From NCBI RefSeq assembly GCF_902713615.1, contig NC_052172.1:12938185-13002184 (forward strand): a stretch of DNA of 64,000 nt, given 5' to 3'. Shown here piece by piece: positions 6,990 to 63,720 of this stretch. The notes under the pieces are model-generated. The model searched no databases. It was not told where the DNA came from and worked only from the letters and a program-made list of their open reading frames with translations. This DNA is from Scyliorhinus canicula. Taxonomy: Eukaryota. The first letter of the stretch is position 1. Each line of letters opens with the position of its first letter. The position numbers were made by a program, and so were the translations under genes.

Positions 6990-7321
6990 TGGGTGGAGTG
7001 GTAGCATAGTGGCTAGCACAGTTGCTTCACGGCTCCAGGGTCCCAGGTTCGATTCCCGGCTTGGGCCACTGTCTGTGCGGAGTCTGCACATTCTCCCCGT
7101 CTCTGTGTAGGCTTCCTCCGGGTGCTCCGGTTTCCTCCCACAGTCCAAAGACGTGCAGGTTAGGTGGGTTGGCCATGATAAATTGCCCTTAGTGTCCAAA
7201 AAGGTTGGGTAGGGTTACGGGGATAGGGTGGAGGCACGGGCTTAGGAGGGGTGCTCTTTCCAAGGCCGGTGCAGACTCGATGGGTCTGAATGGTCTCCTT
7301 CTGCACTGTAAATTCTATGAT
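6990..7321 (+). mobile_element. V-SINE (HE1-like), CR1-type tail B
   Basis: tRNA-like head with box B GGTTCGATTCC, V-domain GGTTTCCTCCCACAGTCCAAAGA, tail CCTTCTGCACTGTAAATTCTATGA. Confidence 0.9.
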
Positions 7322-7439
7322 GGTCTGGAAAACCAATTGTTTCTTTGGCGATTCAATTTCTCAAAACGTTGCAGGACAATTAAAAAGGAAACTAAACATC
7401 AAATGCTGTAGGAGAGAGAGACTGACATTCTGATTCAAA

Positions 7440-7750
7440 GGAGTGACAGGCTGCCTGTTTTTCTCTGGCTGGTGCGTCTAAGATCAGAGGACAAAATCTT
7501 TTGGGTAGCCATTTAAGACTGAAATGAGGAGGCATTTCTTCACTCAAGAGGATGGTGAATCTTTGAAATTCTTTGACCTAGGGGCTGTGGAAGCTCATTC
7601 ATTGAGCATGTTCAAGACAGAAATCGATAGATTTCTGGAGATGGATCACATCCAGGGGATAGTGCGGCGAAAGTGGTGTTGAGGAAGTCGATTAGCCATG
7701 ATCCAATTGAATGGTAGAGCAGGTTTAATGGGCCAAATAGTCTCCTCTTC
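7440..7750 (+). mobile_element. Old CR1 LINE 3' fragment
   Basis: Degenerate RRHFFTQR-VVNLWN-type C-terminal coding remnant and CR1 3' tail. Confidence 0.7.
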
Positions 7751-7989
7751 CTTTGCTCAAAGCAGTGTGCATCGGCATACTAAATGTTCAACTCTGAAAC
7801 TGCCTGGAGAAGCCTCGGACAAGCAATTTGTATATGAACTACTCCATCTAGTTAATGGCAAAATATGGCACTTGCCATTCCAAGGCCTTACTAGAGAAGC
7901 CTGTGAAAGCTTTTTGTCCTAACCTCTTTTATTTGTGACGTGTAGGATATTTCATAAGCATGAAACGCCCATCTCTGTACAAGTGAATG

Positions 7990-9325
7990 TTACATAGAAC
8001 AGTACAGCACAGAACAGGCCCTTCGGCCCTCGATGTTGTGCCGAGCTTTGTCCGAAACCAAGATCAAGCTATCCCACTCCCTGTCATTCTGGTGTGCTCC
8101 ATGTGCCTATCCAATAGCCGCTTGAAAGTTCCTAAAGTGTCCGACTCCACTATCACAGCAGGTAGTCCATTCCACACCCGAACCACTCTCTGAGTAAACT
8201 ACCTCGGATATCCCTCCAATATCTCCCACCCTGAATCTTATAGTTATGCCCCCTTGTAACAGCTACATCCACCCTAGGAAATAGTCTCTGAACTCTATCT
8301 ATCCCCCTCATCATCTTTATAAACCTCTGTTAAGTCACCTCTCATCCTCCTCCGCACCAAAGAAAAAAGCCCTAGCTCCCTCAACCTTTCCTCATAAGAC
8401 CTATCCTGCAAACCAGGCAGCATCCTGGTAAATCACCTTTGCACCCTTTCCAATGCTTCCACATCCTTCCTATAGTGAGGTGACCAGAACTGCACACAGT
8501 ACTCCAAATGTGGTCTCACCAGGGTCATGTATAGTTGCAGCATAACCCCACGGCTCTTAAACTCAAGCCCCCTGTTAATAAACGCTAACACACTATAAGT
8601 CTTCTTCACGGTTCTATCTGCTTGAGTGGCAACTTTCAGAGATCTGTGGACATGAACCCCAAGATCTCTCTGTTCCTCCACATTCCTCAGAACCCTGCCG
8701 TTGACCCTGTCAAATTTTTTCTACCAAAATGATTCACCTCGCACTTATCAGGGTTAAACTCCATCTGCCATTTTTCGGCCCAGCTCTGCATCCTATCAAT
8801 GTCTCTTTGCAGCCTACAGCCCTCCACCTCATCCACTACTCCACCAATCTTGGTGTCATCAGCAAATTTACTGACCCACCCTTCAGCCCCCTCCTCCAAG
8901 TCATTGATAAAAATCGCAAATAGCAGAGGACCCAGTACTGATCCCTGTAGTACACCGCTGGTAACTGGTCTCCAGTCTGAAAATTTTCCATCCACCACCA
9001 CCCTCTGTCTTCTTTGTGATAGTCAGTTACTTATCCAATTGGCCAAATTTCCCTCTATCCCACACCTCCTTACTTTCTTCATGAGCCGACCATGGGGAAC
9101 CTTATCAAACGCCTTACTAAACTCCATGTATACGACATCAACTGCTCTACCTTCATCTACACACTTAGTTACCTCCTCAAAGAATTCAATCAAATTTGTG
9201 AGGCAAGACTTACACTTCACGAATCCCTGTTGACTCTCCCGGATTAAGCGGCATTTTTCCAAATGGTCATAAATCCTATCCTTAAGGACATTTTCCACTA
9301 ACTTACTGACCACCGAAGTGAGGAC
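7990..9325 (-). mobile_element. CR1 LINE, 3' part (RT), decayed
   Basis: ORFs 9023-9388, 8687-9001 and 8433-8681 give SKAFDKVPH, QGSVLGP, FADDTK and RPHLEYCVQFWSP. 3' tail GGGCCGAAGGGCCTGTTCTGTGCTGTACTGTTCTATG at ~7992-8030. Confidence 0.95.
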
Positions 9326-12300
9326 CCTCTGAAGGAAGACCACGATCTGGAAAGGATCCTGCGGTCCCCAACACACTGTCCTGGCCATTGCCTCATCCGC
9401 AACACGATCCCAGAGACGTCATCCACTTACCGGCCTTCACCCAATCCACGCCGGAGCGTGGTCTGGACATCCACCAACCTGTGAAGGCAAATCGCAGCCC
9501 GACAGCGACCCGGAACGCTCGACCGTGCAGACCCACCTACCGACGCAGGAACCGCAAGCAAGGCAACAAATCCTCCATTCACACAACAACCAGAGTGAAT
9601 AACCTCATTGGACACAACCATACCCTTAACACTGCATACTCTCACCATCTCCCAGGCTCGAAAAGAAGCAGTCACTCCAGGAAGCGTAGAAAACGTGCAG
9701 GCCTGCAGGTGAGAGTGAAACAACGCGGCCCCAAAGCCCCTCTGCCTCGCTTACTCCTAGAGTCCAATCTCCAGAAAACAAGCAAGACGAACTTAAAGCC
9801 AGACTCACTGTTCAAAGAGAACTGGGGGACTGTTGTGTGCTCTGTTTCACGGAGACATGGCTCACTCCTGCTTCCCCAGACTGTGCCCTACAACCAAAGG
9901 GCTTCTCAATCCACAGAATGGACCGTATGGCGGCCCCAGGCAAGGCTGGGGGAGGTGGGGGTCTGCCTCCTAATCAACACCTCCTGGTGCCTAGATGTAG
10001 CAACACTGGCGAGTTTCTGCTCCCCGGACCTAGAATACCTGACGCTAAAATGCCGCCCCTACTACCTTCCGCGAGAGTTCAGCTCTGTTATCCTGACGGC
10101 AGTTTACATCCCACCCCATGCGAACGTGACAATCCCACTGGACGAAATATTGACCACCACAAATAGCCTTGAAACGAAACATCCCGAGGCCTTGTTCATT
10201 GTAGCTGGGGACTTCAATCAGGCCAAGCTCAAGAGCGTACTACCAAGTTACCACCAACACATCACCTGTTCCACCAGAGGCCCAAACATCCGGGATCACT
10301 GCTTCACAAATATCAAACATGCGTATTGCTGCCCACACTTTGGCAAATCTGACCACAAGGCTGTGCTCCTGCTCCCGGCCTAGAAGAAAAAACCAAAGCG
10401 GGAGAATCCGTCAAAGAAAGTTGTGCATTATTAGTCTGAGGAATCGGATGATCTCCTACAGGATTGCTTCGAGTCAGTGGACTGGTCAGTATTTAAAAAC
10501 TCTGCGACCAGCCTGAACGAGTACGCCACTACAGTAACTGACTTCATTAGTAAGTGTGTAGAAGACTGTGTGCCAAAGAAACAAATTCACATGTTTCCCA
10601 ACTGGAAACCCTGGATGAACAGGGATATCCATTGCTTACTGAAGTCTAGGTCTGAGGCATTCAAGTCAGACGACCCTGATCTACACAAGAAAGCCAGATA
10701 CGATCTAAAGAAATCCATCAAAGATGCCAAAAGACCGTACCGGACCAAGCTCGAGTCCCAGGCTAGCCACACGGATCCCTGCCGTCTATGGCAAGGTCTG
10801 CAAGACATAACGGGCTAACAAGATGAAGGCATGTAAAATCACCAGCTCCAATGCACCCCTCCCTGATGAGCTCAACGCATTCTATGCCCGCTTTGAGCAA
10901 GAGGTCAGTGAGAGCGAGCCCTCCACCCCAGAAGCCTCTGATGAACATATATCTGAGATCACCATTGCAGACATCAGAGCAGCCTTCTCGAAGGTCAACC
11001 CACGGAAAGCCACTGGCCCGGATGGGGTACCCAAACGGACACTCGGGTCTTGCGTGGATCAGCTGGCGTGGGTATTCGCAGACATCTTCAACCTCTCTTT
11101 ACAACAATCTCGGGTCCCGACCTGCTTCAAGGAGACGACCATCATCCCTGTACCAGAAAGAAATCAAGCAGTGTGCCTGAATGACTATCATCCAGTGGCT
11201 CTGACATCCATCATCATGAAGTGCTTCGAAAGGTTAGTCATGGCACGAATCAACTCCAGCCTCCCGGATTGCTTTGATCCACTACAGTTCGCCTACCGCT
11301 GCAACAGGTCCACAGCAGACGCCATTTCCATGGCCCTGCACACCTAGATAACAAAGATACCTATTTATCGACTACAGCTCAGCCTTCAACACCATCATTC
11401 CTACAAAACTCATCTCCAAATTCCGTGGCCTTGGCCTCGGCTCCTCCCTCTGCGACTGGATCCTGAACTTTCTAACCCAACAGGCCACAATCAATAAGGA
11501 TAGGCAACAGCACCTCCTCCACGATCATCCTCAACACCGGTGCCCCACAAGGCTGTGTCCTCGGCCCCCTATGATACTCCTTATACACCTATGACTGTGT
11601 GACCAAATTCCCCTCCAACTCGATTTTCAAATTTGCTGATGACACCACCGTAGTGGGTCGGATTTCAAACAATGACGAGACAGAGTACAGGAATGAGATA
11701 GAGAATCTGGTGAACTGGTGCAACGACAATAATCTCTCCCTCAGTGTCAACAAAACAAAGGAGATTGTCATCAACTTCAGAAAGCATAGTGGAGAACATG
11801 CCCCAGTCTACATCAATGGGAACGAAGTAGAAAGGGTCGAGAGCTTCAGGTTTTTAGGTGTACGATCATCAACAGCCTGTCCTGGTCCCCCCCCCCCCCC
11901 CCCCCCCCCCCCACCCCCATGCCGACATTATAGTTACGAAAGCCCACCAACGACTCTACTTTCTCAGAAGACTAAGGAAATTTGGCATGTCACCTACCCT
12001 CACCAACTTCTACAGATGCACCATAGAAAGCATTCTTTCTGGTTGTATCACAGCTTGGTATGGAGCCTGCTCTGCCCAAGACAGCAGGAACCCACAAACG
12101 GTCCTGAATGTAGCCCAGTCCATCACGCAAACCAGCCTCCCATCCATTGACTCTATCTATAATTCCCGCTGCCTCAGAAAGGCAGCCAGCATAAGTAAGG
12201 ACCCACGCACCCCAGACATACTCTCTTCCACCTTCTTCCGTCAGGAAAAAGATACCAAAGTTTGAGGTCACGTACCAACCGACTCAAGAACAGCTTCTTC

Positions 12301-12497
12301 CCTGCTGCCATCCGACTTTTGAATGTTCCTGCCTCGTATTAAGTTGATCTTTTCTCTACACCTTGCTATAACTGTAACATATTCTGCAGTCTCTCCTTCC
12401 TTCCCTATGTATGGTATGCATTGTTTGTACAGCGTGCAAGAAACAATACTTTTCACTGTATACTAATACATGTGACAATAATAAATCAAATCAAATC
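9326..12497 (+). mobile_element. Rex1/Babar-type non-LTR retrotransposon, near full ORF (APE endonuclease + RT) with frameshifts and stops
   Basis: LCFTETWL, AVYIPP, AGDFN, SDH, KATGPDG, ALTSIIMKCFERLV, FADDTTVVG and YRCTIESIL motifs. 3' end TTTTCACTGTA...GTGACAATAATAAA(TCAAA)n. Confidence 0.9.
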
Positions 12498-15405: not shown

Positions 15406-15417
15406 CTGGTCTGAGGT

Positions 15418-15716
15418 AATAATCTTTATTAGTGTCACAAGTAGGCTTAAATTAACATTGCAATTAAGTTACTGTGAAAAGCCCCTAGTTGCCACATTCC
15501 AGCGCCTGTTCAGGTACACAGAGGGAGAATTCAGAATGTGCAATTCACCTAAAAAGCACGTCTTTCGGAACTTGTGGGAGGAAACTGGAGCGCCCGGAGG
15601 AAACACACGCAGACATGGGGAGAACGTACACACTCCGCACAGACAGTGACCCAAACCGGGAATCGAACCTGGGACCTGGTGCTGTGAAGCAACAGTGCTA
15701 ACCATTGTGCTACCGT
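15418..15716 (-). mobile_element. V-SINE variant with Rex1-type tail
   Basis: V-domain body followed by GGCTTTTCACAGTAAC...CTTGTGACACTAATAAAGATTATTA. Confidence 0.85.
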
Positions 15717-15844
15717 TCCAACAGCTGTTGAATTTGAACAAAGCACTGCTGCTGGTCATGGGAACATCGTCATGTGAAACTCTCTAGTAAGGCCTTGAGT
15801 GGCAAGTGCCATACATACCCATTCACTACATAGAGTACAATTCT

Positions 15845-16260
15845 TACGTGGGGCAGGAGCAGGGGGACCTGGATGTATTTGTGCCTCAATCATTGAAGGT
15901 GGCAGGATAGGTGGAGAGAGCAGTTAATAACGCTGAGAGTATATGGGCTTTATTAATAGGGGCACAGAGTACAAGAGCGAGGAGGTTATGCTGAACTTAT
16001 ACAAGACACGAGTTAGCCCTCAGCTGGAATATTGTGCACAGTTCTGGGAGACACACTATAGGAAGGATGTGAACACATTGGAGAGAGAGCAGAAGAGGTT
16101 TACAAGAACGGTTCCAGGGATGAGAAACTTCAGCGATGAGGAGAGATTGGGACTGTCCTCCTTGGAGAGAGGAAGGCCGAGAGGCGATTTGATGGAGATG
16201 TTCCAAATCACGAGGGGGCCGGACAGAGTAGACGAGGAGAAACTGTTCCTGCTGGGAGAG
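15845..16260 (+). mobile_element. CR1 LINE 3' fragment
   Basis: ORF 15943-16278: LEYCAQFW, KRFTRTVPG, RGDLMEMF. Confidence 0.85.
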
Positions 16261-16467
16261 CCGATCCTGACACAATAGGCCCAATGGCCTCCTTCTGCAC
16301 CGCAATGATTCTGTGACCTGGACATTTCTGCAAGATAAGAGATCAAGGTCCAACTAGTTCACCTTCCGGTAATCACATAATACACCAATAATTGAGTTGT
16401 TGTCCAATCAGGACAATTGGTCTTTATCAACTTATCTCCAACAAGTCCAGGCATGTAGCGAAACGCA

Positions 16468-16630: not shown

Positions 16631-16653
16631 GGTCTCGGCATGTCACACGATAA

Positions 16654-18510: not shown

Positions 18511-18559
18511 TTAAAAATGAAACTAAAAGGCCCGTACCCATTCTGTGGGCGTCTCAAAG

Positions 18560-22664: not shown

Positions 22665-23205
22665 AATTGTATTGGATTGGATTTGTCTATTATCACGTGT
22701 ACCGAGGTACAGTGAAAAGTATTTTTCTGCGAGCAGCTCAACAGATCATTAAGTACAAGAAATGAAAAAGAAATAAAAGAAAGTGCATAATAGGGCAACA
22801 CAAGGTACACAATGTAACTACATGAGCACCGGCATCGGATGAAGCATACAAGGGTGTAGTGTTAATGAGGTCAGTCCCTAAGAGGGCCGTTTAGGAGTCT
22901 GGTAACAGCGGGGAAGAAGCTGTTTTTGAGTCTGTTTGTGCGTGTTCTCAGACTTCTATATCTCCTGCCCGATGGAAGAAGTTGGAAGAGTGAGTAAGCC
23001 GCCTGGGAGGGGTCTTTGATTATGCAGCCCTGTTTCCCCAGGCAGCGGGAGGTGTAGATGGAGTCAATGGATGGGAGGCATGTTTGTGTGATGGACTGGG
23101 CTGTGTTCACGACTCTCTGAAGTTTCTTGCGGTCCTGGGCCGAGCAGTTGCCATACCAGGCTGTGATGCAGCCAGATAGGATGCTTTCTATGGTGCATCT
23201 GCAAA
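22665..23205 (-). mobile_element. Rex1-type LINE 3' fragment
   Basis: ORF 22871-23215 RCTIESILSGCITAWYG...RLKNSFFP; tail TTTTCACTGTACC...GTGATAATA(CCAAT)n. Confidence 0.9.
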
Positions 23206-23418
23206 ATATCTTCAATAGTGAGTCAGTGATGTTGGGCGCCTTTTCAATAGGCCCCCGGAAGAGATGACAGACGAGGCACCATCAGGCCTGCCCCGTCACA
23301 GAATCAGAAACCAGCACATCAAGGGGTCAATGAAAATTGTGGGAGCGTCAAAGAAATTGACATGGTATGTCTATCTGTGGTAGTGAGAGAAAGAGAGGAA
23401 ATGCGGTGAGGGGAGTGA

Positions 23419-25816: not shown

Positions 25817-26610
25817 AAATGAAATGAAAATCGCTTATTGTCACGAGTAGGCTTCAATGAAGTTACTGTGAAAAGCCCCTAGTCGCCACATTCCGGCGCC
25901 TGTCCGGGGAGGCTGGTACGGGAATCGAACCGTGCTGCTGGCCTGCTTTAAAAGCCAGCGATTTAGCTCAGTGAGCTAAACCAGGCTGGGGTTGTTTTCC
26001 TTGGAGCAGAGAAGGCTGAGGGGGGCATCGGATTGAGGTGTACAAAATTATGAGGGACATCGATAGGGAGAATCCTCTTCTCTTAGTAGAGGTCAATAAC
26101 CAGGGGGGCATGGATTTAAGGTAATGGACAGGGGATTTGAGGAAAACCATTTTCACCCAGAGGGTGGTGGGAATCTGGAACTCGCTGCCTGAAAGGGTGG
26201 TAGAGGCGGAACCGTCACATTTAAGAAGCATTTCATAGACTTTACAGTGCAGAAGGAGGCCATTCGGCCCATCGAGTCTGCACCGGCTCTTGGAAAGAGC
26301 ACCCTACCCAAGGTCAACACCTCCACCCTATCCCCATAACCCAGTAACCCCACCCAACACTAAGGGCAATTTTGGACACTAAGGGCAATTTATCATGGCC
26401 AATCCACCTAACCTGCACATCTTTGTGACTGTGGGAGGAAACCGGAGCACCCGGAGGAAACCCACGCACACACGGGGAGGATAAATTTAGACGAGCACTT
26501 GAAACATCATAGAATACCAGGATACGGAGCAAGGGCTGAAAAATGGGAATAGAATAGATAGGTGCTTGATGGCTGATGCAGACATGGTGGGTCGAAGGGC
26601 CGCTTTCTGT
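25817..26610. mobile_element. CR1 3' fragment (+) carrying a short tRNA SINE (25817-25988, -) and a V-SINE (26233-26481, -)
   Basis: CR1 sequence resumes on either side of each SINE. Confidence 0.8.
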
Positions 26611-29407: not shown

Positions 29408-29439
<32 letters not shown>

Positions 29440-32409: not shown

Positions 32410-32745
32410 TGGACGTTGGACAGCAACAAGCTTTTTCCAAGAGTGGGGGTGTCAGTTACAAGGCATCACGATTTCAAAGTGAGAGGGGGAAAGTTTAAGG
32501 GAGATGTGCGTGGAAAGTTTTTTACGCAGAGGGTGGTGGCTGCCTGGAATGCTTTTCCAGCGGAGGTGGTAGAGGCGGGCACGATAGCATCATTTAAGAG
32601 GCATCTAGACGGGTATATGAACGGGCGGGAACAGAGGGAAGTAGAGCTTGGAAAATAGGAGACAGGTTGAGATAAAGGATCTGGATCGGCGCAGGCTGGG
32701 AGGGCCGAAGGGCCTGTTCCTGTGCTGTAATTTTCTTTGTTCTTT
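32410..32745 (+). mobile_element. CR1 3' fragment
   Basis: KFFTQRVVAAWN and the CR1 tail GGGCCGAAGGGCCTGTTCC. Confidence 0.85.
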
Positions 32746-39191: not shown

Positions 39192-39413
39192 GGGGCAGCA
39201 CGGTGGCGCAGTGGATAGCACTGCTGCCTCGCGTCGCCGAGGTTCAATCCCGGCTCTGGGTCACTGTCCGTGTGCAGTTTGCACATTCTCCCCGTGTTTG
39301 CGTGGGTTTCGCCCCCACAATCCAAAGATGCGCAGGCTAAGTGGATTGGCCACGCTAAACTGTCCCTTAATTGGGAAAAAATGAATTGGGTACTGTAAAT
39401 TTTTTTTTTTAAA
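39192..39413 (+). mobile_element. Short V-SINE variant in the 3' UTR
   Basis: TSD AGTTC(C/T)AGTCC, with TTAAAA immediately before the left copy. Confidence 0.85.
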
Positions 39414-42621: not shown

Positions 42622-43130
42622 CATAGAATCCTTACAGTGCCGAAAGAAGCCATTCGGCCCATCAAGTCTGCACCAACTTTCCGAAGGGGCACCCTACCTA
42701 GACCCCCTCCCTTTCCCTATTCCTGTAATCCCACTTAGCCTGCACATCTTTGGACATTACGAGACAATTTAGCATAGCTAATCCACCCTAACCCGCACAT
42801 CTTTGGACTGTGGGAGGAAACCGGAGCACCCGGAGGAAACCCACGCAGACACGGGGAGAACGTGCAGACCCCGCGCGTTTACACAAGGTCAGAATCGAAC
42901 CCGGGCCCCTGAAATGAAATGAAATGAAAATCGCTTATTGTCACGAGTAGGCTTCAATGAAGTTACTGTGAAAAGTCCCTAGTCGCCACATTCCGGCGCC
43001 TGTCCGGGGAGGCTGGTACGGGAATCGAACCGTGCTGCTGGCCTGCTTGGTCTGCTTTAAAAGCCAGCGATTTAGCCTTGTGAGCTAAACCAGCCCCTGG
43101 TGGCGTGAGGCAGCAGTACTAACCACTGTG
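42622..43130 (-). mobile_element. V-SINE containing a short tRNA(Ile-like) SINE (42911-43097)
   Basis: The V-SINE head is split at CCCTG by the short SINE. Confidence 0.88.
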
Positions 43131-46700: not shown

Positions 46701-48197
46701 ACAAAGGAGAGCCAGTGGACGTGATCTATTTGAATTTCCAGAAGGCCTTTGGACAAGGTGCCGTACAGGAGGCTGCTAAATAAGATAAGAGCCCATGGTG
46801 TTAGGGGCAAGGTACTGGCACGGATAGAGGATTGGCTGACTGGCAGAAAGCGGGGAGTGGGGATAAAGGGGTCTTTTTCAGGATCATAGATCATAGAATT
46901 TACAGTGCAGAAGGAGGCCATTCAGCCCATCGAGTCTGCATCGGCTCTTGGAAAGAGAACCCTACCCAAGGTCAACACCTCCACCCTATCCCCATAACCC
47001 AGTAACCCCACCCAACACTAAGGGCAATTTTGGACACTAAGGGCAATTTATCATGGCCAATCCACCTAACCTGCACATCTTTGGACTGTGGGAGGAAACT
47101 GGAGCACCCGGAGGAAACCCACACACACACTGGGAGGATGTGCAGACTCCGCACAGACAGTGACCCAAGCCGGAATCGAACCTAGGACCCTGGAGCTGTG
47201 AAGCAATTGTGCTATCCACAATGCTACCGTGCTGCCCTATGGCAGCAGGTGACTAGTGGTTTCCTGCAGAGATCAGTTTGCGACCACAACTTTTCACAAT
47301 ATACATTAACAATCTGGAAGAAGGAACTGAGGGCATCGTTGCTAAGTTTGCAAAGATATGTAGAGGGACAGGTAGTTTTGAGGAAGTGTTGAGGGTGCAG
47401 AAGGACTTGGACAGGCTAGGAGAGTGGGCTAGGAAGTGGCAGATGGAATACCATGTGGAAAAGTGTGAGGCTATGCTGTTTGGGGGGAAGAATAGAGGCA
47501 TAAACTATTTTCTAAATGGGGAAAGGCTTCGGAAATCTGAAGCATAAAAGGACTTGGGAGTCCTCGTTCAGGATTCTCCTAAGGTTAAAATTCAATGTTA
47601 GTATTCATTTCGAGAGGGCTAGAATACAAGAGTAGGAATGTATTGCTGAGGCTATATAAGGCTCTGGTCAGACTACGTTTGGAGTATTGTGAACAGTTTT
47701 GGGCCCTGTATCTAAGGAAGGATGTGCTGGGCCTTGGAAAGGGTCTGGAGGAGGTTGACAAGAATGATCCCTGGAATGAACAGCTTGTCGTATAAGGAAT
47801 GGTTGAGGACTCTGGGTGTGTACTCGATAGGAGTTTAGAAGGATGAGGAGGGAATCTCATTGTAACTTGAAGAATACTGAGAGGCCTAGATAGAGTGGAT
47901 GTGAAGAAGATGTTTCCACTGGTAGGAGAGGCTAGAACCCAAGGGCACGGCCTAAGGCTGAAGGGATGATCCTTTAAAACTGGGATGAGGAGGAATTTCT
48001 TCAGCCAGAGGGTGGTGAATCTGTGGAACTCATTGCCCCAGGAGGCTGTGGAGACCAAGTCACTGAGTGTCTTTAAGACAGAGATAGATAGGTTCTTGTT
48101 AATAAGGGGATTCGGGGTTATGGGGAGAAGGCAGGAGAATGGAGATGAGAAACATATCAGCCATGATCGAATGGCGGAGCAGACCCAATGGGCCTAA
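43740..48197 (+). mobile_element. Near full-length decayed CR1 LINE (ORF1 zinc finger/esterase, ORF2 EN-RT), interrupted by a V-SINE (46884-47237, -)
   Basis: ORF1 CFTCMMWE and VVVHVGTN; ORF2 LYLNARSIRNK, GITETW, MGDFN, GSSDH, QHGFVKG, FQKAF, RRNFFSQRVVNLWN. Confidence 0.93.
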
Positions 48198-48371: not shown

Positions 48372-48922
48372 CGTGTGTGCGTGGGTTTCCTCCGGGTGCT
48401 CCGGTTTCCTCCCACAGTCCAAAGATGTGAAGGTTGGGTGGATTGGCCATGATAAATTGCCCTTAGTGTCCAAAATTCTATGATTAAACTAGGACAAAAG
48501 TTTGGCACAACATCGTGGGCCGAAGGGCCTGTTCTGTGCTGTATTTCTCTAAATCTAAATCTAAATCTTCATTCTGTTGAATCTTCAATCATTAATGTCT
48601 TCAATGTTCGGGCGGCATGGTGGTGCCCTGCTGCCTCACGGCGCTGAGGTCCCAGGTTCGATCCCAGCCCTGGGTCACTGTCCGTGTGGAGTTTGCACAT
48701 TCTCCGTGTGTCTTTTTTCAAAAATTAATTGACAGTGCCCAATTTTGTTTTCCCAATTAAGGGGCAATTTAGCATAGGCAATCCACCTAACCTGCACATC
48801 TTTGTGTTGTGGGGGTGAGACCTATGCAGACACGGGGAGAATGTGCAAACTCCACACAGATGGTCCACCGTGCCTGCCCGTTAATTTGGAAAAAAAATAA
48901 TTGGCTACTCTGAATTTAAATA
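48372..48922. mobile_element. V-SINE cluster, including a short variant with 11-bp TSD and an inverted nested copy
   Basis: TSD AATGTCTTCAA at 48594-48604 and 48923-48933. Confidence 0.85.
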
Positions 48923-48969
48923 AATGTCTTCAAGGTTTCATTTCAGAGAGAAGGGAAAAGCGCAAAGAG

Positions 48970-50830
48970 ATCCGGGACTCAATGCTGCCTTTGTCAGGGT
49001 CCTAATGCAATGGATGAGGCGAATGAGGGAGAGGTGATGCTGTGTGCAACTCTAGCAGGATGCCCCGCCTGAGGGACATGGTCAAGAGGGAGCCAGAGCA
49101 TGAACAGAAGGGTCAGAAGGAGAGACCCAGATTTCAGAGGCGAATCATCAGACCAAAGGTAAACCCAAGAAGAGTCTCCAATTTAGAAATGAGTGAGAGA
49201 CAATGTCAGATGTCTGCACTTGTCATGACCTCTGACAGATCAATGACGCCATATTCTTTGTGAAGACTTGACACCACGAGGAGTTGGAGCTTTCCCCCTG
49301 AACATAGAACATAGACATAGAACAGTACAGCACAGAACAGGCCCTTCGGCCCTCGATGTTGTGCCGAACAATGATCACCCTACTTAAACCCACGTAACCC
49401 GTATACCCATAACCCAACAATCCCCCCATTAACCTTACACTACGGGCAATTTAGCATGGCCAATCCACCTAACCCGCACATCTTTGGACTGTGGGAGGAA
49501 ACCGGAGCACCCGGAGGAAACCCACGCACACACGGGGAGGACGTGCAGACTCCACACAGACAGTGACCCAGCCGAGAATCAAACCTGGGACCCTGGAGCT
49601 GTGAAGCATTGATGCTAACCACCATGCTACCGTGAGGCAGCGCAGTTTCTGCCTGCGGGGGCTTTCCAGTGATCAACTGGGTACTTCTGTGGCATCACTC
49701 AGTCCCAAACACACAGATGCATAAAGGTCAAAGTTGCTCTTTACAAGAAGGTACATCAGTTTGTCAGGTTTGCTCTGGATGAAAATAGGCCGGCTGCAGA
49801 TTCACCACCGTCGCCACCATCTCAGGTTTCCCAAGAGTGCAGGGTGCAATAGACTGCACCCATGTAGCTTTATGGGCTCCATTGCAGCAGCCCCTAATGT
49901 TATTAAAGTGCAAAAGCTACCATTCTATCAATGTGCAGATCGTATGTGATCATTGCATGAACAAAATGCACGTTAGTACACGATACACTGGGAGTTGCCA
50001 TGATTTCTGCATCCTAAATCACTCCCAGGTCCACATGAGACTTTCAAAGGGCCAGTACATCTGCAGGAGTGACTACTTCGGGATAAGTGGTGCCCACTGA
50101 AACGCTGGCTGATGATACTGGTACGTTGCCATCACAGTCATTCCAAGGAGAGATACAACGCTGCTCACAACTCCACACGCTCTCTTATAGAGAGAACCAT
50201 ATGACTTCTGAAGATGCATTTCAGGGCAGCACGGTAGCATTGTGGGTAGCACAATGGCTTCACAGCTCCAGGGTCCCAGGTTCGATTCCGGCTTGGGTCA
50301 CTGTCTGTGCGGAGTCTGCACATCCTCCCCGTGTGTGCGTGGGTTTCCTCCGGGTGCTCCGGTTTCCTCCCACAGTCCAAAGATGTGCAGGTTAGGTGGA
50401 TTGGCCATGATAAATTGCCCTTAGTGTCCAAAATTGCTCTTAGTGTTGGGTGGGGTTACTGGGTTATGGGGATAGGGTGGAGGTGTTGACCTTGGGTAGG
50501 GTGCTCTTTCCAAGAGCCGGTGTAGACTTGATGGGCCAAATGGCCTCCTTCTGCACTGTAAACTCTATGAAAGGTGCTTGGACTGCTCAGATGGTTCACG
50601 GAAATACAATCCCAATAGGGTTTCACCCATCATTGCAAGTGTGTTGCATCCTTCACAAACTGGCAATGTAAAGAGATGATCCTTTGCCAGAAGGTGAAAT
50701 GGAGGCGGATGAGAGCTTAGCAGTGGATGAAGATACAGAGGAAGCTCAGGAGGCTGCTGAGGGTCAGTATGAACGTGATGACACTACGGAGGAAGCAAGA
50801 CATGGGAGACGTGCTGACAGGTCCCAGTTA
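48970..50830 (+). mobile_element. PIF/Harbinger DDE transposase pseudo-ORF, split by two V-SINEs (49301-49640 -, 50224-50549 +)
   Basis: GAIDCTHV, YHSINVQIVCD, GSCHD, RCLD and CCILH motifs of HARBI1-type transposases. Confidence 0.88.
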
Positions 50831-51829: not shown

Positions 51830-54075
51830 CCCGACATCTGCAGAAAAGGCGGAGGCAGCCTGTTGACTGCTCTGTCGTGATGTGCGCGATTACCTTGGTG
51901 GGCGCCCTCTGCTGGCCCAAAGCCTGGAGGTTCCCCACCTGATCAGGATCTCCTGCTCCGGGGCTGATGCACCCTCTGCAGTCTGAGGAACTGGGGTGGA
52001 TGGGGTCACAGGCAGTGAGGACTTGAGCGGTTGCACATTCTTGGAGTGTCCTGTGAGGAGGCCCCCGGGGTGTCCGGCTGGTGATCACCCACCCTGTGGG
52101 TTCCCAGGTTTTCCGACCTTGAGGAGTTGGTGCACCTGGAGTGAGGTCAACGCCCGCATATCATCTACATTTTGATGGTGCCCACCTGGGTGTGTAGCCA
52201 TGAAGTGCAGGGTCGAGCGCAAATACGGGAAGACCTACTGGATCATGGTCTCCACAGTGGTCACCGGCCTTCCCATTGTGACCTCGATGGAACATGGACC
52301 GACTCCTCTGTTGTTCGCTCTAGTCTGCTGAGTGACTGTTGAATGATCTTCCATGCCTGATCTTCCGCTGCCTGTTGTCACACCTCCAACATTGGGTTGG
52401 CGGCCACTCGCAGAGGTTCATCTTCTGATGCAGCCCTTCGAGTGCCGCAGACCTGGGCTGCCCCTGCTTCTGACTGCTGCACGGATGTGTCAGTGAGATG
52501 CCCTCCCCAGCCTGATCTGGAGCTGCGCCCCATCGAGGTGTGTGTCTCTGCGCTGGTGGAGGTTGCGGGTGAGCGCTATGACCCTTCTTCCAGCACTTCC
52601 TCTTCAGACGTGGTCTGGGGGCTCCGACTGATGCCGGGCTGCCTTGTGGGCCGCGATCTGCTGCTCCCTAGAAAATAGAGTTTCAGTTGACGAGCATGAA
52701 CAATGTAACGCTGCACTGTGAGTGTCAGGATTTGGTGAAGTGATGGGTCTGTGATCCAGCTAAGGTTGGTCAGACGAAACCGATCTTCCCTTCCCCACAG
52801 GAGTAACCCCTGTCCTCCCCAGCCAGCTCAGCAGTTGTCTCCTCAAACTCTGTGAGGACATAAGAACTAGGAGCAGGAGTAGGCCATCTGGCCCCTCGAA
52901 CCTGCTCCGCCATTCAATGGCTGATCTTTTGTGGACTCAGCTCCACTTTCCGGCCCGAACACCATAAACCTTAATCCCTTTATTCTTCAAAAAACTATCT
53001 ATCTTTACCTTAAAAACATTTAATGAAGGAGCCTCAACTGCTTCACTGGGAAAGGAATTCCATAGATTTACAACCCTTTGGGTGAAGAAGTTCCTCCTAA
53101 ACTCAGTCCTAAATCTACTTCCCCTTATTTTGAGGCTATGTCCCCTAGTTCTGCTTTCACCCGCCAGTGGAAACAACCTGCCCGCATCTATCCTATCTAT
53201 TCCCTTCATAATTTTATAGGTTTCTATAAGATCCCCACTCCTAAATTCCAACGAGTACAGTCCCAGTCTACTCAACCTCTCCTCATAATCCAACCCTTTC
53301 AGCTCTGGGATTAACCGAGTGAATCTCCTCTGCACACCCTCCAGTGCCAGTACGTCCTTTCTCAGGTAAGGAGACCAAAACTGAACACAGTACTCCAGGT
53401 GTGGCCTCACTAACATCTTATACAATTGCAGTATAACCTCCCTAGTCTTAAATCCATCCCTCTAGCAATGAAGGGCAAAATTCCAAAATGTGCCTTCTTA
53501 ATCACCTGTTGTACCTGTAAACCAACTTTTTGCGACTCATGCACTAGCACACCCGGGTCTCTCTGCACAGCGGCATGCTTTAATATTTTATTATTTAAAT
53601 AATAAATAACAATAAGGACAATGATATTGGTCATCCGTTCCCTGGTCTGCGCCCTTTCCCTTCTGTTGTAAGTCAGCTTGTCCTGTATGAAGATGAAAGA
53701 AAGGCATGTAACCAGAGGGGATGGAGCAGAGGTCGGGTGAGGTACATATCCCTGTGTGTGGTGAGTCTTTCCCAGAAGGGCCAGAAGATGGGGTGTGAGC
53801 AACATGCTGGATGGGATGGTGGTGATGTGAAAGGTTCTGTGAGACAATACGTGGCGAGGTGTGTCCCCTGCTAATGGATGTGTGAGATTCCTGAAGAGAG
53901 TACCCCTTTTGAGTCCACAAAGCCATGATTGGAGGTTGTTGAAGGGTGACCTACCCTGTGCCAACCTCCTGTACAGGGCAGAGTGATGAGGCTGGTGGTC
54001 TTCCATCCCTGGGGTACAGGACATGCCTCTCCTCCCACACTCCTCTGGTCAAAGCCTCAAGGGCCTGGTGGGTGA
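51830..54075 (-). mobile_element. Probable Harbinger second gene (Myb/SANT-like), decayed, interrupted by a CR1
   Basis: Convergent with the transposase. Acceptor-like CATACAG then DKLTYNRRERAQT (~53685-53645); EERHVLYP segment near 54030. Confidence 0.55.
52858..53600 (-). mobile_element. CR1 LINE 3' fragment, relatively intact
   Basis: ORF 52937-53425 RPHLEYCVQFWSP...RRNFFTQRVVNLWN with a CR1 tail. Confidence 0.93.
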
Positions 54076-54102: not shown

Positions 54103-54272
54103 TGGGCAGGTTTAGCTCAGTGGGCTCGACAGCTGGTTTACAATGCAGAACAAGGCCAGCGGCGCGGGTTCAATTCCCGTACCTGCTGACCCGAACAGGT
54201 GCCGGAATGTGGCGTCTAGGGGCTTTTCACAGTAACTTCATGCTTGTGACAATAAAAAATTATTATTATTAT
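54103..54272 (+). mobile_element. Diverged short tRNA-derived SINE with (TTA)n tail
   Basis: Same architecture as the 24180 family. Confidence 0.8.
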
Positions 54273-59717: not shown

Positions 59718-60052
59718 AGTGAGGTTGAGGGCAGAGGGTAAGAGGAGGGAAGATGGAGGAAGGTGAGCGTTGGGGATAAATTACCTTTCTGGTACAAAGT
59801 GCCGGACAATGACTATCTCCTATAATAGAGGACCTAACCGCCGCCCCTTTACAGTCAATAGCATTACCATCACTGAATGCCCCACAATCAATGCCTTGGT
59901 TGTCACTATTGAACTGGACTGGCCATATTAGTCCTGTAGCTACCAGAGCAGGTCAGAGGCTGTGAATCCTGCGGCGAGTAACTCACCACCTGCCCCCAAG
60001 AGCCTGTCCACCATCTACCACCAAGTCGGGAATGTGTTTGAATACTCTCCAC

Positions 60053-60997: not shown

Positions 60998-62019
60998 GAA
61001 TACTCTCCACTTGCCTGGATGAGTGCAACTCCAACAACACTCAACAAGCTCGACACCATCCAGGACAAAGCAGCCAGGCGTGATTGCTCCTTCCACAAAC
61101 ATTTAAACCCTCCACTACCGACGAACAGTGCCAGCCGTGTGTACCATCCACGAGATGCACTGCGGTAACTCACTAAGGTTCCTTAGGCAGCACCTTCCAA
61201 ACCCACCACCACTACCATCCAGAAGGACAAGAGCAGCAGATGCCTGGGAACCCCACCACCTGGAGGTTCCCCTCCAAGTCACTCACCACCCCAACCTGGA
61301 AATATATCGGCCGTTCCTTCACTGTCGCTTGGTCAAAATCCTGGAACTCCCTCCCTAACAGCACAGTGGGTGTACCTACACCTCAGGGACTGCAACGGCT
61401 CAAAAAGGCAACTCCACACCCTAACCCTAACCAGCGAAGCCCGCATCCCGTAAATACATTTAAAAAAATTGTGTGCATCAGTAACAAAATTAAAATAGAC
61501 TTGCAGTATTTGCAGAAATAAATCTATCAGTGACCCCATCACTTCCTCATTTGGTGAGGCGGGTATAAACCTTTCAGTAATCTGCACTACCACGTGTTAC
61601 CTGTTTAAACTAGTTCTGCTGAGGGAGCGCTTCATGTGGATCCCATAGCATCAGTAGGGGTTCAGGGGTCACGGGTCACGGGTCATGAAGCAGCCGTTTA
61701 GCCCCTTTGGGAATCCTCGGGACGTGCGGATGGTTGCAATGTCGTCATTCTGCGTCCTTAACATCGCTGTGCAGTTGCTACTGTCCAGATTAAACGTTTT
61801 TATTTTATGGATTCATGGGGTGGTCATTGCTGGTTAGGTCAGCATTTTTCAAGCCCGTCCCTAGTTGCCTTTGAAAAGGGCAATTATGGTCTCTCCCTCT
61901 CTCTCTCTCTCTCTCTCCTGTGTTGGGGTTTGTACATCATGTCAGACCCACCTGTTCCTTCAAACACTTTCTAAACCACTTCACCTCACTACCTTACTTC
62001 CTCCTTTCAAAGACCACTC

Positions 62020-63030
62020 CTTAAATGACACCACAAAGTGCTTTACAGACAGCCAAGTGTTTTCTGAAGTTTAGTCACTTGTAATGTAGCCAATATGTAC
62101 GCAGCAAGATTCCACAAACATCAATGATCTGTTTTTCGGGATGTTGACATAAACTTATTATGTCCACCTGAGAGAGCAGGTGGGGGCCTCGTTTTAATGT
62201 CATCCAAAACACAATGGGCAGGATTCTCTCATCCTGAGGCTAAGTGTTGAAGCCGTCGTAAAGGCCGTCACGTTTCTCGACGGCGTCAACAGGGCCTTCA
62301 GGAGCAGTGATTCTGACCCCTGCAGGGGGCCAGCACGGTACTGGAGCGCCCCACGCCGCTCCAGCTGCCGATCCTGGCGTCAGATGGGCGCTGCGGGTCT
62401 GCGCATGCGGAGTGGGACCGGCGCCAATGCGCGCATGCGCGGTGGCTCCCTTCTCCGCGCCGGCCCCGACGCAACATGGCGCAGGGCTACAGGGGCCAGA
62501 ACGAAACCAAAAGAGGCCCCCAGCCCGAGAGGCCGGCCCGCCGGTCGGTAGGCCCCGATCGCGGGTCAAGCCGCCGCGGAGGCCCCCCCCGGGGTCGGAC
62601 AACCCCCCCCCCCCCCCGGCCCCCCCCCCCCCCCCCACCCCCCACCACCACCAGGCCGTCCCCGGATGCATGCACGCCGAGGTCCCGCCGGGTCCGACCA
62701 CACATGGACTCCGCCGGTGGGACTCGGATTTTCTGCGTGGCCGCTCGGCCCATCGGAGAATCGCCGCGCATAGAGCGGACCCAACTGGTGCCGCGCCGGC
62801 ACCGATTCTCCGCTCTCCGGAGAAGCGGCGGACCGGCATTGGGGCATCATCGCGCGATTCGAGCCCGTCCCGGCAATTCTCCGGCCCGGCCTGGGCTGAG
62901 AGAATCCGGCCCAGTATCTCCAACATTGCGGCACCCCCTCAGTACTGGGACTGCCAGCCGCGATTATGTGCTCAGGTCTCTGAAGTGCGACTTGAACCCA
63001 CAACCCACTGCCTCAGTGGCAAAATTGCTA
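62020..63030 (-). mobile_element. Deu-domain SINE split by a MITE
   Basis: GTCCACCTGAGAGAGCAG...GGGGCCTCG...CATCC before the insert; CTCAGTACTG...GACTTGAACCCACAACC after it. Confidence 0.75.
62216..62912. mobile_element. GC/CpG-rich MITE with Harbinger-like TIRs
   Basis: TIR GGGCAGGATTCTCTC / GAGAGAATCCGGCCC (14 of 15 match); flanks AAT/AGT; sub-terminal hairpins. Confidence 0.75.
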
Positions 63031-63199
63031 CTTCCTGATACCATGACTGGTGCCTGGAAAGTGCAGCTTTCCTGAAGGGAGTGAAAGAGCAAGAAAAGAA
63101 CAAGGTGTCCTTGATAGGCTGCCAACCAGAACTGACCTGGAGTCTCCAAGAATTGAGGATGAATCTCCACGGGTCTGCTGTGAGAAACATCTGGAAATC

Positions 63200-63720
63200 A
63201 GCACATGCTTAGCACTGTTGCTTCACAGCTCCAGGATCCCAGGTTCGACTCCCGGTTTGGGTCACCGTCTGTGCGGAGTCTGCACGTTCTCCCCGTGTCT
63301 GCGTGGCTTTTCCTCCGGGTGCTCCGGTTTCCTCCCACAGCCCAAAGACGTGTAGGTTAGGTGGATTGCTCTTGCTAAATTGCCCCCTTAGTGTCCAAAA
63401 AAAGGTTGGGTTGGGTGGGGTTACTGGGATAGGGTGAGGGTGTGGGCTTAGGTAGGGTGCTCTTTCCAAGGGCCGGTGCAGACTCGATGGGCCGAATGGC
63501 CTCCTTCTGCACTGTAAATTGTATGATTCTACGTGCCGATTAGGTGGATTGACCATGATAAATTGCCCTTAGTATCCAAAAGGGGTTGGATGGGGTTGCT
63601 GGGTTACGGGGATAGAGTGGAGGTGTGGGCTTAAGTGGGGGTGCTCTTTCCAAGGGCCGGCCCAGACTCGATGGGCCGAGTGATCTCCTTCTGCACTGTC
63701 AATCCTATGATTCTGTGATC
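63200..63720 (+). mobile_element. V-SINE plus a tandem second 3' half
   Basis: Matches the V-SINE consensus. Confidence 0.88.

What the first reader, a model, noticed from the sequence alone, without database searches (positions are those of the whole stretch)
6990..63720. One V-SINE body with four interchangeable 3' tails that match three different LINE clades present in the window
Seen: the same tRNA head and V-domain core end in four ways. (A) GCTCGGCACAACATCGAGGGCCGAAGGGCCTGTTCTGTGCTGTAC(TGTTCTA)n, identical to the 3' end of the CR1 at 7990 (e.g. 16654, 37233, 49301). (B) GGGCCGAATGGCCTCCTTCTGCACTGTAAATTCTATGA, another CR1-type end (6990, 50224, 63200). (C) CTTTTCACAGTAAC...GTGACACTAATAAAG(ATT)n, which echoes the Rex1-type LINE end CTTTTCACTGTA...GTGACAATAATAAA at ~12450-12497 (15418, 24478). 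(D) A short A-rich tail with 10-14-bp TSDs. Established: SINEs borrow LINE RT through shared 3' ends, and V-SINEs are known to pair with CR1/L2-group LINEs. Inference: this shark SINE family has swapped tails to use CR1, Rex1/Babar and L1 machinery in parallel.
Basis: partly seen in the sequence, partly recalled or inferred. Interest (0 to 1): 0.72.

Follow-up and report, generated by a model that had tools for sequence, protein, structure and literature searches.

The report
Shark SINE family with swapped tails
One family of short jumping-DNA elements in this shark-like genome keeps the same front and middle but occurs as four sub-lineages with different 3' ends, each fitted to a different helper element; this is a clear example of a process already described in other animals.

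Summary
About 12% of the window is one tRNA-headed V-domain SINE, and it ends in four ways at the cited places.

- **Tail A:** its last 53 nt are 53/53 identical to the 3' end of the CR1 LINE at 7990-9418(-).
- **Tail B:** the classic HE1-like CR1 end, matching 45 of 60 aligned columns of a CR1 fragment ending at 16316.
- **Tail C:** shares a two-block terminal motif with the Rex1-like LINE ending at 12497. Its roughly 100-nt module is shared with a second, V-less tRNA-SINE.
- **Tail D:** a ~40-nt A/T-rich module. Only D copies have 10-15-bp target-site duplications, which start with A and often follow TT.

- No L1 lies in the window, so only two LINE clades are present.
- A tree of head plus core shows A, C and D each as a single clade, so each tail was gained once.
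- Ages differ: D is old, C is intermediate, and A and young B are recent.

Partner switching by tail exchange is published for the V-, CORE- and Meta-SINE superfamilies. This scan's first readers flagged the same pattern in at least six other windows of this genome. I found no paper describing Rex1-type or L1-type tails on shark V-SINEs.

The parts
50224..50572 (+). Full-length class B V-SINE (reference copy): tRNA-like head, V core, ~140-nt CR1-type post-core region, hairpin, ATTCTATG-like end
46891..47237 (-). Full-length young class B copy, inserted in a CR1 LINE (46565-48215). Other B copies: 6992-7320+, 17831-18143+, 55443-55772+, 63200-63526+. 5'-truncated B copies: 19824-19994+, 25258-25358-, 26231-26482-, 26939-27078+, 30623-30799-, 30403-30540-, 37108-37219-, 54497-54691-, 63533-63710+
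42622..42911 (-). Old class B copy with a D-like head variant and a B tail, interrupted by a SINE2 insertion (42922-43096) with at most 3 bp of duplication
49296..49634 (-). Full-length class A V-SINE. Other A copies: 16654-16996+, 37233-37576-, 5537-5723+ (5'-truncated)
7990..9418 (-). 5'-truncated CR1 LINE with an RT core (FADD motif at 8866) and a C-terminal region. Its last 53 nt are identical to tail A
15943..16316 (+). CR1 LINE fragment (internally deleted) whose 3' end is of the B type (45 of 60 aligned columns identical to the SINE B tail)
32428..32745 (+). CR1 C-terminal fragment with an A-type 3' end (37/41 identical to tail A)
52850..53598 (-). CR1 fragment with a third type of 3' hairpin end that no V-SINE in the window carries
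15417..15718 (-). Full-length class C V-SINE. Other C copies: 24482-24765+ (5'-truncated), 27741-27795+ (tail only)
9322..12497 (+). Rex1-like LINE: endonuclease region, RT core (FADD at 11632), PF09004-type C-terminus, frameshifted. It ends in CTTTTCACTGTA, a hairpin, GTGACAATAATAAA and (TCAAA)n
22672..23215 (-). Second, diverged Rex1-like C-terminus and 3' end with the same terminal motif and a covarying hairpin
25822..25987 (-). SINE2, a simple tRNA-like-head SINE without a V core. It carries the C'-type tail that shares about 80-100 nt with V-SINE tail C. Other copies: 19504-19669-, 24182-24346+, 27099-27275-, 36035-36207+, 42922-43096-, 54902-55068-
54105..54270 (+). SINE2 variant whose last 38 nt match the Rex1-like LINE end 33/38 (z = 11). 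It ends in (ATT)n like tail C and bridges the LINE end and tail C
39193..39411 (+). Full-length class D V-SINE with a 15-bp TSD (13/15) preceded by TT. Other D copies: 33998-34216+, 51586-51784+, 33150-33345+, 20590-20720+ (5'-truncated), 32945-33075-
48612..48925 (+). Class D copy interrupted by another D copy in the opposite orientation (48715-48875-)
30538..30799 (-). Composite: a 5'-truncated B SINE with a complete B tail, followed directly by a ~75-nt A' CR1 3' end, then another 5'-truncated B SINE (30403-30540)
48372..48557 (+). V core joined to the same A' CR1 end through the same ATTCTATGA junction, with the B post-core region missing. The result is a core-plus-new-tail structure

Best explanation
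The window holds many copies of one tRNA-derived V-domain SINE family of the HE1 type known from sharks. It has split into sub-lineages, each of which replaced its 3' module once.

**Ancestral-looking form (B).** It ends in a CR1 3' region about 140 nt long. This has a two-tier hairpin and an ATTCTATG-like microsatellite, the signal that a CR1 reverse transcriptase recognises and primes on.

**Class A.** A young offshoot of B that exchanged only the last ~53 nt for the end of a currently young CR1 lineage.

**Class C.** It replaced everything after the V core with a ~100-nt module that it shares with a second, simple tRNA-SINE. The terminal hairpin and GTGACA-TAATAAA-plus-short-repeat end of that module are those of a Rex1-like LINE.

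**Class D.** The oldest class. It has a short A/T-rich end with no LINE similarity. It integrated by an L1-like route: a nick at TT|A-rich sites and 10-15-bp duplications.

**Shown here:**
- the shared body;
- the exact or significant tail-to-LINE matches;
- the conserved hairpins;
- the class-specific TSD behaviour;
- a single origin for each of A, C and D;
- the different ages.

**Inferred:**
- that each tail actually recruits that LINE's enzymes;
- that exchange arose by template switching, or by LINE-end insertion into the SINE's microsatellite followed by deletion;
- that the helper of D is L1.
For: **Body**
- Head plus core align over about 200 nt in all classes.
- Box A and box B are kept.
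- A 31-mer of a published teleost V-SINE consensus (supplement of PMC6887750) hits 13 copies at <=3 mismatches, against 0.00 expected.

**CR1 tails**
- A matches the CR1 at 7990 53/53 and the CR1 at 32428 37/41. B matches the end of the CR1 at 15943 in 45 of 60 aligned columns.
- The same hairpin with compensatory stems occurs in 4 SINE and 3 of the 4 LINE ends; the internally deleted CR1 end at 16275 keeps only the inner stem.
- The octamer-like microsatellite is present.
- Four of 24 CR1-type tails are followed directly by another 5'-truncated CR1-tailed SINE. That fits microsatellite-primed insertion.

**Rex1-like tail**
- The exact two-block pattern occurs only at the LINE end and on SINE C.
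- Local alignment gives z about 6 for C and z = 11 for the SINE2 variant. Tails A, B and D give z between about -1 and 2.
- The motif and hairpin are conserved in a second diverged LINE copy. Three outside contigs of the 12497 lineage show the same terminal sequence with a few substitutions.

**Class D**
- Five of 6 copies have flank matches above every null pair. None of 8 A/B copies and none of 2 C copies do.
- The TSDs start with A, and 3 of 6 are preceded by TT.

**Single origins**
- Clade supports are A 100/99, C 100/98 and D 99/98. B is paraphyletic, with A nested among young B.

**Literature**
- HE1 V-SINE paired with the HER1 LINE in sharks (table in PMC3747384).
- Tail change by template switching (PMC4824008; bioRxiv 10.1101/081950).
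- Multiple LINE partners of V-SINEs in bivalves (PMC11481361).
Against: - There is no L1 in the window, and tail D was found only on V-SINEs, so the helper of D is not identified.
- D copies end in a T-run with very few A's, which is not a textbook L1-type tail.
- The LINE at 12497 shares only about 12 + 15 nt with tail C, with a different loop length. No Rex1-like copy with the full C module was found.
- The clade name Rex1 could not be tested against named references (searches returned only unnamed or generic names).
- Sample sizes are small (A 4, C 3, D 8 copies) and come from one 64-kb window.
- The tree root is only a midpoint, so 'B ancestral' is an inference.
Confidence: 0.75

Rival explanations
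1. The classes, D above all, are independently old V-SINE families that share the head and V domain only by deep common ancestry. Under this reading nothing was swapped in this lineage, and D may never have had a CR1 tail.
For: D is only 71-80% identical to A, B and C in head plus core. It lacks the 18-19-nt internal repeat and forms the deepest split in the tree. V domains are conserved across phyla (PMC4824008).
Against: - Old B copies (42622, 20956, 55147) carry the D-like head variant together with the B tail. The same body lineage therefore bore both ends.
- The internal repeat is present in teleost V-SINEs and is also lost by slippage in B copy 17831. Its absence in D is therefore derived.
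- A and C are nested within B diversity, so for them replacement is hard to avoid.
Confidence: 0.2
2. Tail C was not captured from a Rex1-like LINE. It came from the simple tRNA-SINE (SINE2) through a SINE-to-SINE template switch or recombination. The LINE similarity is inherited second-hand.
For: C and SINE2 share about 80-100 nt at 78-89% identity, starting near the 3' end of SINE2's tRNA part. The LINE shares only the terminal two blocks. The SINE2 variant at 54105 is closer to the LINE (33/38) than C is.
Against: This does not contradict use of the Rex1-like enzyme; it only changes the donor. A LINE lineage with the longer C-type loop may exist elsewhere in the genome. Only one LINE lineage and one diverged copy were seen.
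Confidence: 0.5
3. Class D is mobilised by a LINE other than L1 that recognises the specific ~40-nt D tail, for example an RTE-like or other stringent element. The A-rich TSD starts would then reflect only that enzyme's own nick preference.
For: The D tail is a conserved sequence module, not a plain poly(A). The A-run after the T-run is very short. No L1 is in the window.
Against: - No LINE with this tail was seen in the window.
- TSD length of 10-15 bp and TT|A-rich targets are the L1 signature.
- Earlier notes of this scan report L1 lineages elsewhere in this genome (not checked by me).
Confidence: 0.25
4. The resemblance between tail C and the LINE end at 12450-12497 is a chance echo of short A/T-rich words.
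For: The shared blocks are short (12 and 14-15 nt) and the spacer differs (13 nt against 33 nt).
Against: - The exact two-block pattern has 0.00 expected matches and occurs only at these ends.
- Shuffle z is about 6, and 11 for the SINE2 variant, while the other tails score as background.
- Both blocks sit immediately before the terminal short repeat in SINE and LINE alike.
- They flank a hairpin that covaries between two LINE copies.
Confidence: 0.04

Closest known systems
HE1 V-SINE and its partner HER1 LINE of sharks and rays (Ogiwara et al. 1999, 2002; listed in PMC3747384)
   Same: A tRNA-derived head, a V domain and a CR1-like LINE-derived tail in an elasmobranch host. Class B (~345 nt) fits this description.
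   Different: The HE1 sequence itself was not available to compare. I found no description of classes A, C and D (a second CR1 end, a Rex1-like end, an A/T-rich end with long TSDs) in the papers I could search.
HCD SINEs of bivalves with multiple LINE partners (Martelossi et al. 2024, PMC11481361; Nishihara et al. 2016, PMC4824008)
   Same: The same conserved-domain SINE superfamily, including V, carries tails homologous to several LINE clades. Homologous tails are shared between different SINE families. Tandem-like SINE arrays occur.
   Different: Those partners are CR1-Zenon, Nimb, L2 and CR1. Here they are two CR1 lineages, a Rex1-like LINE and an L1-like route, all within one vertebrate genome and one closely related family.
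CORE-SINEs (MIR with L2, MIR3 with L3/CR1, Mar-1 with RTE; table in PMC3747384)
   Same: One head and core with different LINE-derived tails in different sub-lineages. This is the textbook case of partner switching.
   Different: A different core domain, and the variants are mostly spread over different host lineages rather than lying side by side in one locus.
TguSINE1 / PittSINE of passerines (Suh et al., bioRxiv 10.1101/081950)
   Same: CR1-derived SINE tails with the RT-binding hairpin and an 8-nt microsatellite. Template switching is proposed as the source of new modules.
   Different: There the head was exchanged and the tail kept. Here the tail was exchanged and the head kept.
Mammalian L1-dependent SINEs, including the 'T+' type with a pol III terminator and a polyadenylation signal in the tail (own knowledge, not checked here)
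   Same: Class D has long TSDs that start with A at TT|A sites, and a T-run near its 3' end followed by A's.
   Different: D has a V core and only very short A-runs. An AATAAA is present in only 2 of 8 copies. No L1 partner was seen in this window.

Membership tests
V-SINE superfamily | tRNA-derived head with pol III box A and box B | tested here: met
   Box A and box B with 25-45-nt spacing occur in full-length copies of classes A, B, C and D, and the heads align. ARAGORN does not call these heads as tRNAs, so they are diverged.
V-SINE superfamily | Conserved central V domain | tested here: met
   A 31-mer of a published catfish Ac1-like V-SINE consensus (PMC6887750 supplement) matches 13 copies at <=3 mismatches, most at 1, against 0.00 expected. 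Class D has lost one copy of the internal 18-19-nt repeat.
V-SINE superfamily | 3' tail shared with a partner LINE | tested here: met
   - A: 53/53.
- B: 45 of 60 aligned columns.
- C: terminal two-block motif, z about 6.
- D: no LINE match in the window, so the feature is not met for D.
HE1 family (Ogiwara 1999) | Sequence identity to the HE1 consensus | not testable with these tools
   The HE1 papers are not held and no HE1 sequence was available. The assignment rests on the description in PMC3747384.
CR1-clade partner (tails A and B) | 3' UTR hairpin plus an ~8-nt microsatellite end | tested here: met
   A two-tier hairpin with compensatory outer stems is seen in the SINE A and B ends and in 3 of the 4 CR1 LINE ends folded. 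The ends are ATTCTATG-like or TGTTCTA-like repeats. The feature is as described for CR1 in 10.1101/081950 and PMC4316615.
CR1-clade partner (tails A and B) | RT groups with CR1 in a phylogeny | not tested
   Only the RT motif context and C-terminal motifs were read. No named references were at hand. CR1 versus Zenon was not resolved.
Rex1/Babar-clade partner (tail C) | RT and C-terminus group with named Rex1 elements | not testable with these tools
   The nearest relatives carry RVT_1 plus PF09004. They come from sharks, rays, salmonids and other teleosts. Those taxa are reported as richest in Rex1 (PMC13343379). No hit is named Rex1.
Rex1/Babar-clade partner (tail C) | 3' end made of short tandem repeats after a conserved terminal motif | tested here: met
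   The ends are (TCAAA)n and (AATCC)n after CTTTTCACTGTA, a hairpin and GTGAYAATA. This holds in two diverged window copies and in three outside contigs of the first copy's lineage.
L1-type (relaxed, poly(A)-primed) mobilisation (class D) | Target-site duplications of about 7-20 bp | tested here: met
   Five of 6 D copies have 10-15-bp TSDs above every null pair. None of 10 A, B or C copies do.
L1-type (relaxed, poly(A)-primed) mobilisation (class D) | TT|AAAA-like nick site | tested here: inconclusive
   Three of 6 TSDs are preceded by TT, and all 6 start with A. The sample is too small for a logo.
L1-type (relaxed, poly(A)-primed) mobilisation (class D) | 3' poly(A) tail | tested here: inconclusive
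   Copies end in a T-run followed by 0-14 A's that merge with the A-rich TSD start.
L1-type (relaxed, poly(A)-primed) mobilisation (class D) | An L1 LINE present as enzyme source | tested here: not met
   Only two RT cores are in the window, CR1 and Rex1-like. L1 elsewhere in the genome is known to me only from earlier unchecked notes.

The most novel reading that the evidence does not exclude
Class D would be the first V-SINE lineage shown to have left stringent CR1-type recognition for relaxed, L1-type mobilisation. It would do so with a tail built like mammalian 'T+' SINEs: a terminator T-run followed by an added A-tail. Separately, the two composite copies (a B tail followed by an A' CR1 end, and a V core joined directly to A') would be caught intermediates of tail exchange. 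The route would be insertion of a LINE end into the SINE's own microsatellite, followed by deletion of the old tail.
Probability: 0.25. Interest if true: 0.6.

Novelty: new member of a known kind. Interest (0 to 1): 0.4.

Why it matters
This single locus shows side by side how a SINE survives turnover of its helper LINEs. The promoter head and conserved core stay the same, and the 3' recognition module is replaced.

Sharks have very large, CR1-dominated genomes (PMC8455134, PMC13343379), and their SINEs have been little curated since HE1. A four-tail subfamily scheme would improve repeat annotation there. It would also give dated markers for shark phylogeny.

The system is natural material for testing two questions:
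- which 3' features each LINE reverse transcriptase needs;
- whether the conserved V domain helps tail exchange, an old open question quoted in PMC6887750.

The principle itself is already established, so the value is that of a clean, testable example rather than a new mechanism.

Tried and rejected
1. **Read laying** on 15300-20800 was meant to find empty insertion sites in other individuals or species. Empty-site proof of TSDs and insertion ages is therefore missing.
2. **Chromosome-scale shark loci** for more LINE and SINE copies could not be fetched. The records were too large and no DNA was returned. Only three short contigs of the same LINE lineage (L001-L003) and one teleost-like contig (L004, cut before its end) were obtained.
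3. **Naming the LINE clade** from database names failed. Two word searches gave only 'uncharacterized', 'reverse transcriptase domain' or 'AlkB homologue 8 N-terminal domain' labels.
4. **The original V-SINE and HE1 papers** are not held.
5. **A LINE carrying tail D** was not found in the window; there are only D copies.
6. **A third RT (L1)** was not found, either by motif scan or by relaxed tblastn.
8. **Readings rejected:**
   - The 1009-aa ORF at 56780-59809 is not a LINE or a gene; it is a translated GC-rich minisatellite.
   - The identical junction of the two A' composites does not prove a composite master copy. Microhomology-guided 5' joining could give the same junction twice.

Full report
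**Scope and the gap**

The finding spans 6990-63720 and includes an assembly gap (28413-28553 and 28563-29283).
- I looked at both gap edges first. The left edge is ordinary sequence and the right edge is a ~20-nt tandem repeat.
- No SINE copy touches either edge.
- Every element used below lies wholly on one side. Nothing here depends on continuity across the gap, which remains unknown.

Yes.
- The core of tail A occurs 7 times at <=1 mismatch, and that of tail B 13 times at <=3 mismatches. Both have 0.00 expected by shuffling.
- The end of tail C occurs on two SINEs and, with 2 mismatches, at the end of a LINE.
- A blastn of three representative copies against the window finds about 35 loci.
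- With all classes as queries, 46 blocks totalling 8.4 kb match, about 12% of the read bases once a few LINE and SINE2 tail hits are discounted. A second SINE family adds 1.5 kb.

**The shared body**

An alignment of 15 full-length copies shows the four classes share the tRNA-like head and the core over about 200 nt, then part.
- Box A and box B with tRNA-like spacing are kept in full-length copies of every class.
- The core is a V domain. The supplement of PMC6887750 prints consensus sequences of teleost V-SINEs. A 31-mer taken from the catfish one matches 13 window copies, most with a single mismatch, against 0.00 expected.
- Class D has lost one copy of an internal 18-19-nt repeat. The teleost elements have this repeat, and B copy 17831 has lost it independently.

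**Tails A and B are CR1 ends**

Only two reverse-transcriptase cores exist in the window.
- One belongs to a 5'-truncated CR1 on the minus strand (9418 down to 7990). Its reading frames carry the usual CR1-type RT and C-terminal motifs.
- The last 53 nt of this CR1 are 53/53 identical to SINE tail A. A second CR1 fragment (32428-32745) matches tail A 37/41.
- Tail B matches the end of an internally deleted CR1 fragment (15943-16316) in 45 of 60 aligned columns, z about 15.
- A third kind of CR1 end (52850-52913) is on no SINE here.
- The four SINE ends and three of the four CR1 LINE ends fold into the same two-tier hairpin (the internally deleted end at 16275 keeps only the inner stem). The inner stem is GGCC-NNNN-GGCC. 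The outer stem of 7-9 bp differs in sequence but stays paired.
- The hairpin is followed by ATTCTATG-like or TGTTCTA-like repeats. This is the hairpin plus octamer microsatellite described as the CR1 RT-binding and priming signal (PMC4316615; bioRxiv 10.1101/081950).
- A and B also remain alignable with each other through about 130 nt after the core. Both share a GGGTTATGGGGA-type stretch with CR1 3' regions. The whole post-core part of B is therefore CR1-derived, and A differs mainly by exchange of the terminal 53 nt.

**Tail C and the Rex1-like LINE**

The second RT core belongs to a plus-strand LINE (9322-12497).
- It has an endonuclease region, an RT and a C-terminus that matches Pfam PF09004 in its relatives.
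- Its closest relatives come from sharks, rays, salmonids and other teleosts. Rays and sockeye salmon are the taxa reported as richest in Rex1 (PMC13343379).
- No hit is named Rex1 and I had no named reference. 'Rex1' is therefore likely (about 0.8) but untested.
- The LINE ends in CTTTTCACTGTA, a short hairpin, GTGACAATAATAAA and (TCAAA)n.
- The pattern 'CTTTTCACNGTA, 8-38 nt, GTGACANTAATAAA' matches exactly only there and on SINE C.
- Local alignment of the last 110 nt gives z about 6 (0 of 500 shuffles) for both C copies. Tails A, B and D give z between about -1 and 2.
- A second, diverged Rex1-like copy (23215 down to 22672) has the same two blocks, and the top of its hairpin covaries. Three outside contigs of the first lineage repeat the terminal motif with a few substitutions.
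- One qualification matters. Tail C shares about 80-100 nt, not just the end, with a separate simple SINE that has a tRNA-like head and no V core ('SINE2', eight copies).
- One SINE2 variant (54105-54270) matches the LINE end 33/38 with z = 11 and ends in (ATT)n like tail C.
- The chain therefore runs from the LINE end to SINE2 to V-SINE C. The C module may have been taken from SINE2 rather than from the LINE itself.

**Tail D**

After CCCCTTA the D copies carry a conserved ~40-nt A/T-rich module. It usually ends in AAATTT plus a T-run, followed by 0-14 A's.
- This module occurs only on V-SINEs in the window.
- I compared the 30 nt upstream and 45 nt downstream of each well-bounded copy, using all mismatched flank pairs as the null (240 pairs, maximum score 7.5).
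- Five of 6 D copies score 9-12.5, with the match adjacent to the element. None of 8 A/B copies and none of 2 C copies exceed chance.
- The D duplications are 10-15 bp long, all six start with A, and 3 of 6 are preceded by TT. This is the L1-type signature.
- By contrast, a SINE2 copy that split an older V-SINE shows at most 3 bp of duplication.
- Four of 24 CR1-type tails are followed within a few bases by another 5'-truncated CR1-tailed SINE in the same orientation. About 0.1 would be expected from element density. That fits priming on the microsatellite.
- No L1 RT is in the window, however. That L1 lineages exist elsewhere in this genome I know only from earlier, unchecked notes of this scan.

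**Are the tails interchangeable and used in parallel?**

The evidence does not support this. I built a maximum-likelihood tree from head plus core only, with 18 copies of at least 140 nt; shorter copies were left out.

| Class | Tree result | Head plus core identity within class |
|---|---|---|
| A | One clade, 100/99, nested among young B | 96-98% |
| B | Paraphyletic | Young B 95-100%; older B down to 76% |
| C | One clade, 100/98, next to an old B copy | 90% |
| D | One clade, 99/98 | 76-89%; 71-80% to the other classes |

- Old B copies carry the D-like head variant.
- The simplest history is an old CR1-tailed family from which D, then C, then A arose by single tail replacements, with activity shifting over time.
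- The tree root is a midpoint only, so the direction of change is inferred.

**Possible intermediates**

Two loci join a V-SINE to a ~75-nt end of a further CR1 sub-lineage (A') through the same ATTCTATGA junction.
- One locus (30538-30799) keeps the complete B tail in front of A'.
- The other (48372-48557) has lost the B post-core region, so the V core runs straight into A'.
- This is what tail exchange by LINE-end insertion into the SINE's microsatellite, followed by deletion, would look like.
- There are only two copies, and microhomology-guided joining could make the same junction twice. I give this as a lead only.

**Comparison with what is known**

- HE1 is the shark and ray V-SINE, and HER1 is its LINE partner (table in PMC3747384). 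Class B fits that description, but I could not compare sequences because the papers are not held.
- SINE superfamilies are reported to survive by changing LINE partners, probably by template switching. This is stated for MetaSINEs (PMC4824008), noted by Kojima (PMC5786205), and shown for V, CORE, Meta and Deu SINEs of bivalves with four LINE clades (PMC11481361).
- The principle is therefore known. In the papers I could search I found no description of a second CR1 end, a Rex1-like end shared with another SINE, or an L1-like class within shark V-SINEs.
- First readers of this scan flagged the same pattern in at least six other windows of this genome, and the A-tailed class in three more. Those are repeats of the same reading, not independent support.

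**Limits**

- The data come from one window with few copies per class.
- The organism name is coded.

Noticed in passing
window 19504-19669(-), 24182-24346(+), 25822-25987(-), 27099-27275(-), 36035-36207(+), 42922-43096(-), 54105-54270(+), 54902-55068(-): A second, simple SINE family ('SINE2'). It has a ~90-nt tRNA-like head, which ARAGORN calls tRNA-Phe(aaa), Ser or Ile, joined directly to a Rex1-like tail that ends in (ATTTC)n or (ATT)n. It has no V core.
   Followed up: partly
window 37704-38633 (+): An intact 309-aa ORF with a SERTA motif (Pfam PF06031, E = 1.3e-12) and an acidic C-terminus. It is probably a single-exon SERTAD-family host gene.
   Followed up: partly
window 56780-59809 (-): The 1009-aa 'ORF' with no Pfam hit is the translation of a ~3-kb, 66% G+C minisatellite with proline-rich 8-11-residue units. 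It is not a gene model I would trust.
   Followed up: partly
window 29284-29440: A ~20-nt tandem repeat (GTCTGTGTCCATCTCTCTCT-like) starts immediately at the right edge of the assembly gap, which probably explains the gap.
   Followed up: no
window 63200-63710, 37108-37576, 30403-30799: There are tail-to-head arrays of CR1-tailed SINEs. A 5'-truncated copy starts within a few bases of the preceding copy's microsatellite in 4 of 24 tails. This suggests that the microsatellites themselves are preferred targets.
   Followed up: partly
window 48612-48925: A class D SINE is interrupted by another class D copy in the opposite orientation, forming a ~100-nt inverted repeat.
   Followed up: no
window 54690-55240 (-): A CR1 C-terminal region is interrupted by a SINE2 insertion. 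Its 3' UTR runs directly into a 5'-truncated B SINE. This could be a nested insertion or a template-switch chimera.
   Followed up: no
window 40200-41500: This 61% G+C stretch has long ORFs open in several frames on both strands and no Pfam hit. It may be a CpG-island-like or low-complexity region.
   Followed up: no
window 31186-31611 (-): This is a complex junction. A V-SINE is cut at the core, followed by ~100 nt of CR1 C-terminal coding sequence ending at its stop codon, and then directly by the head of a B-type SINE.
   Followed up: no
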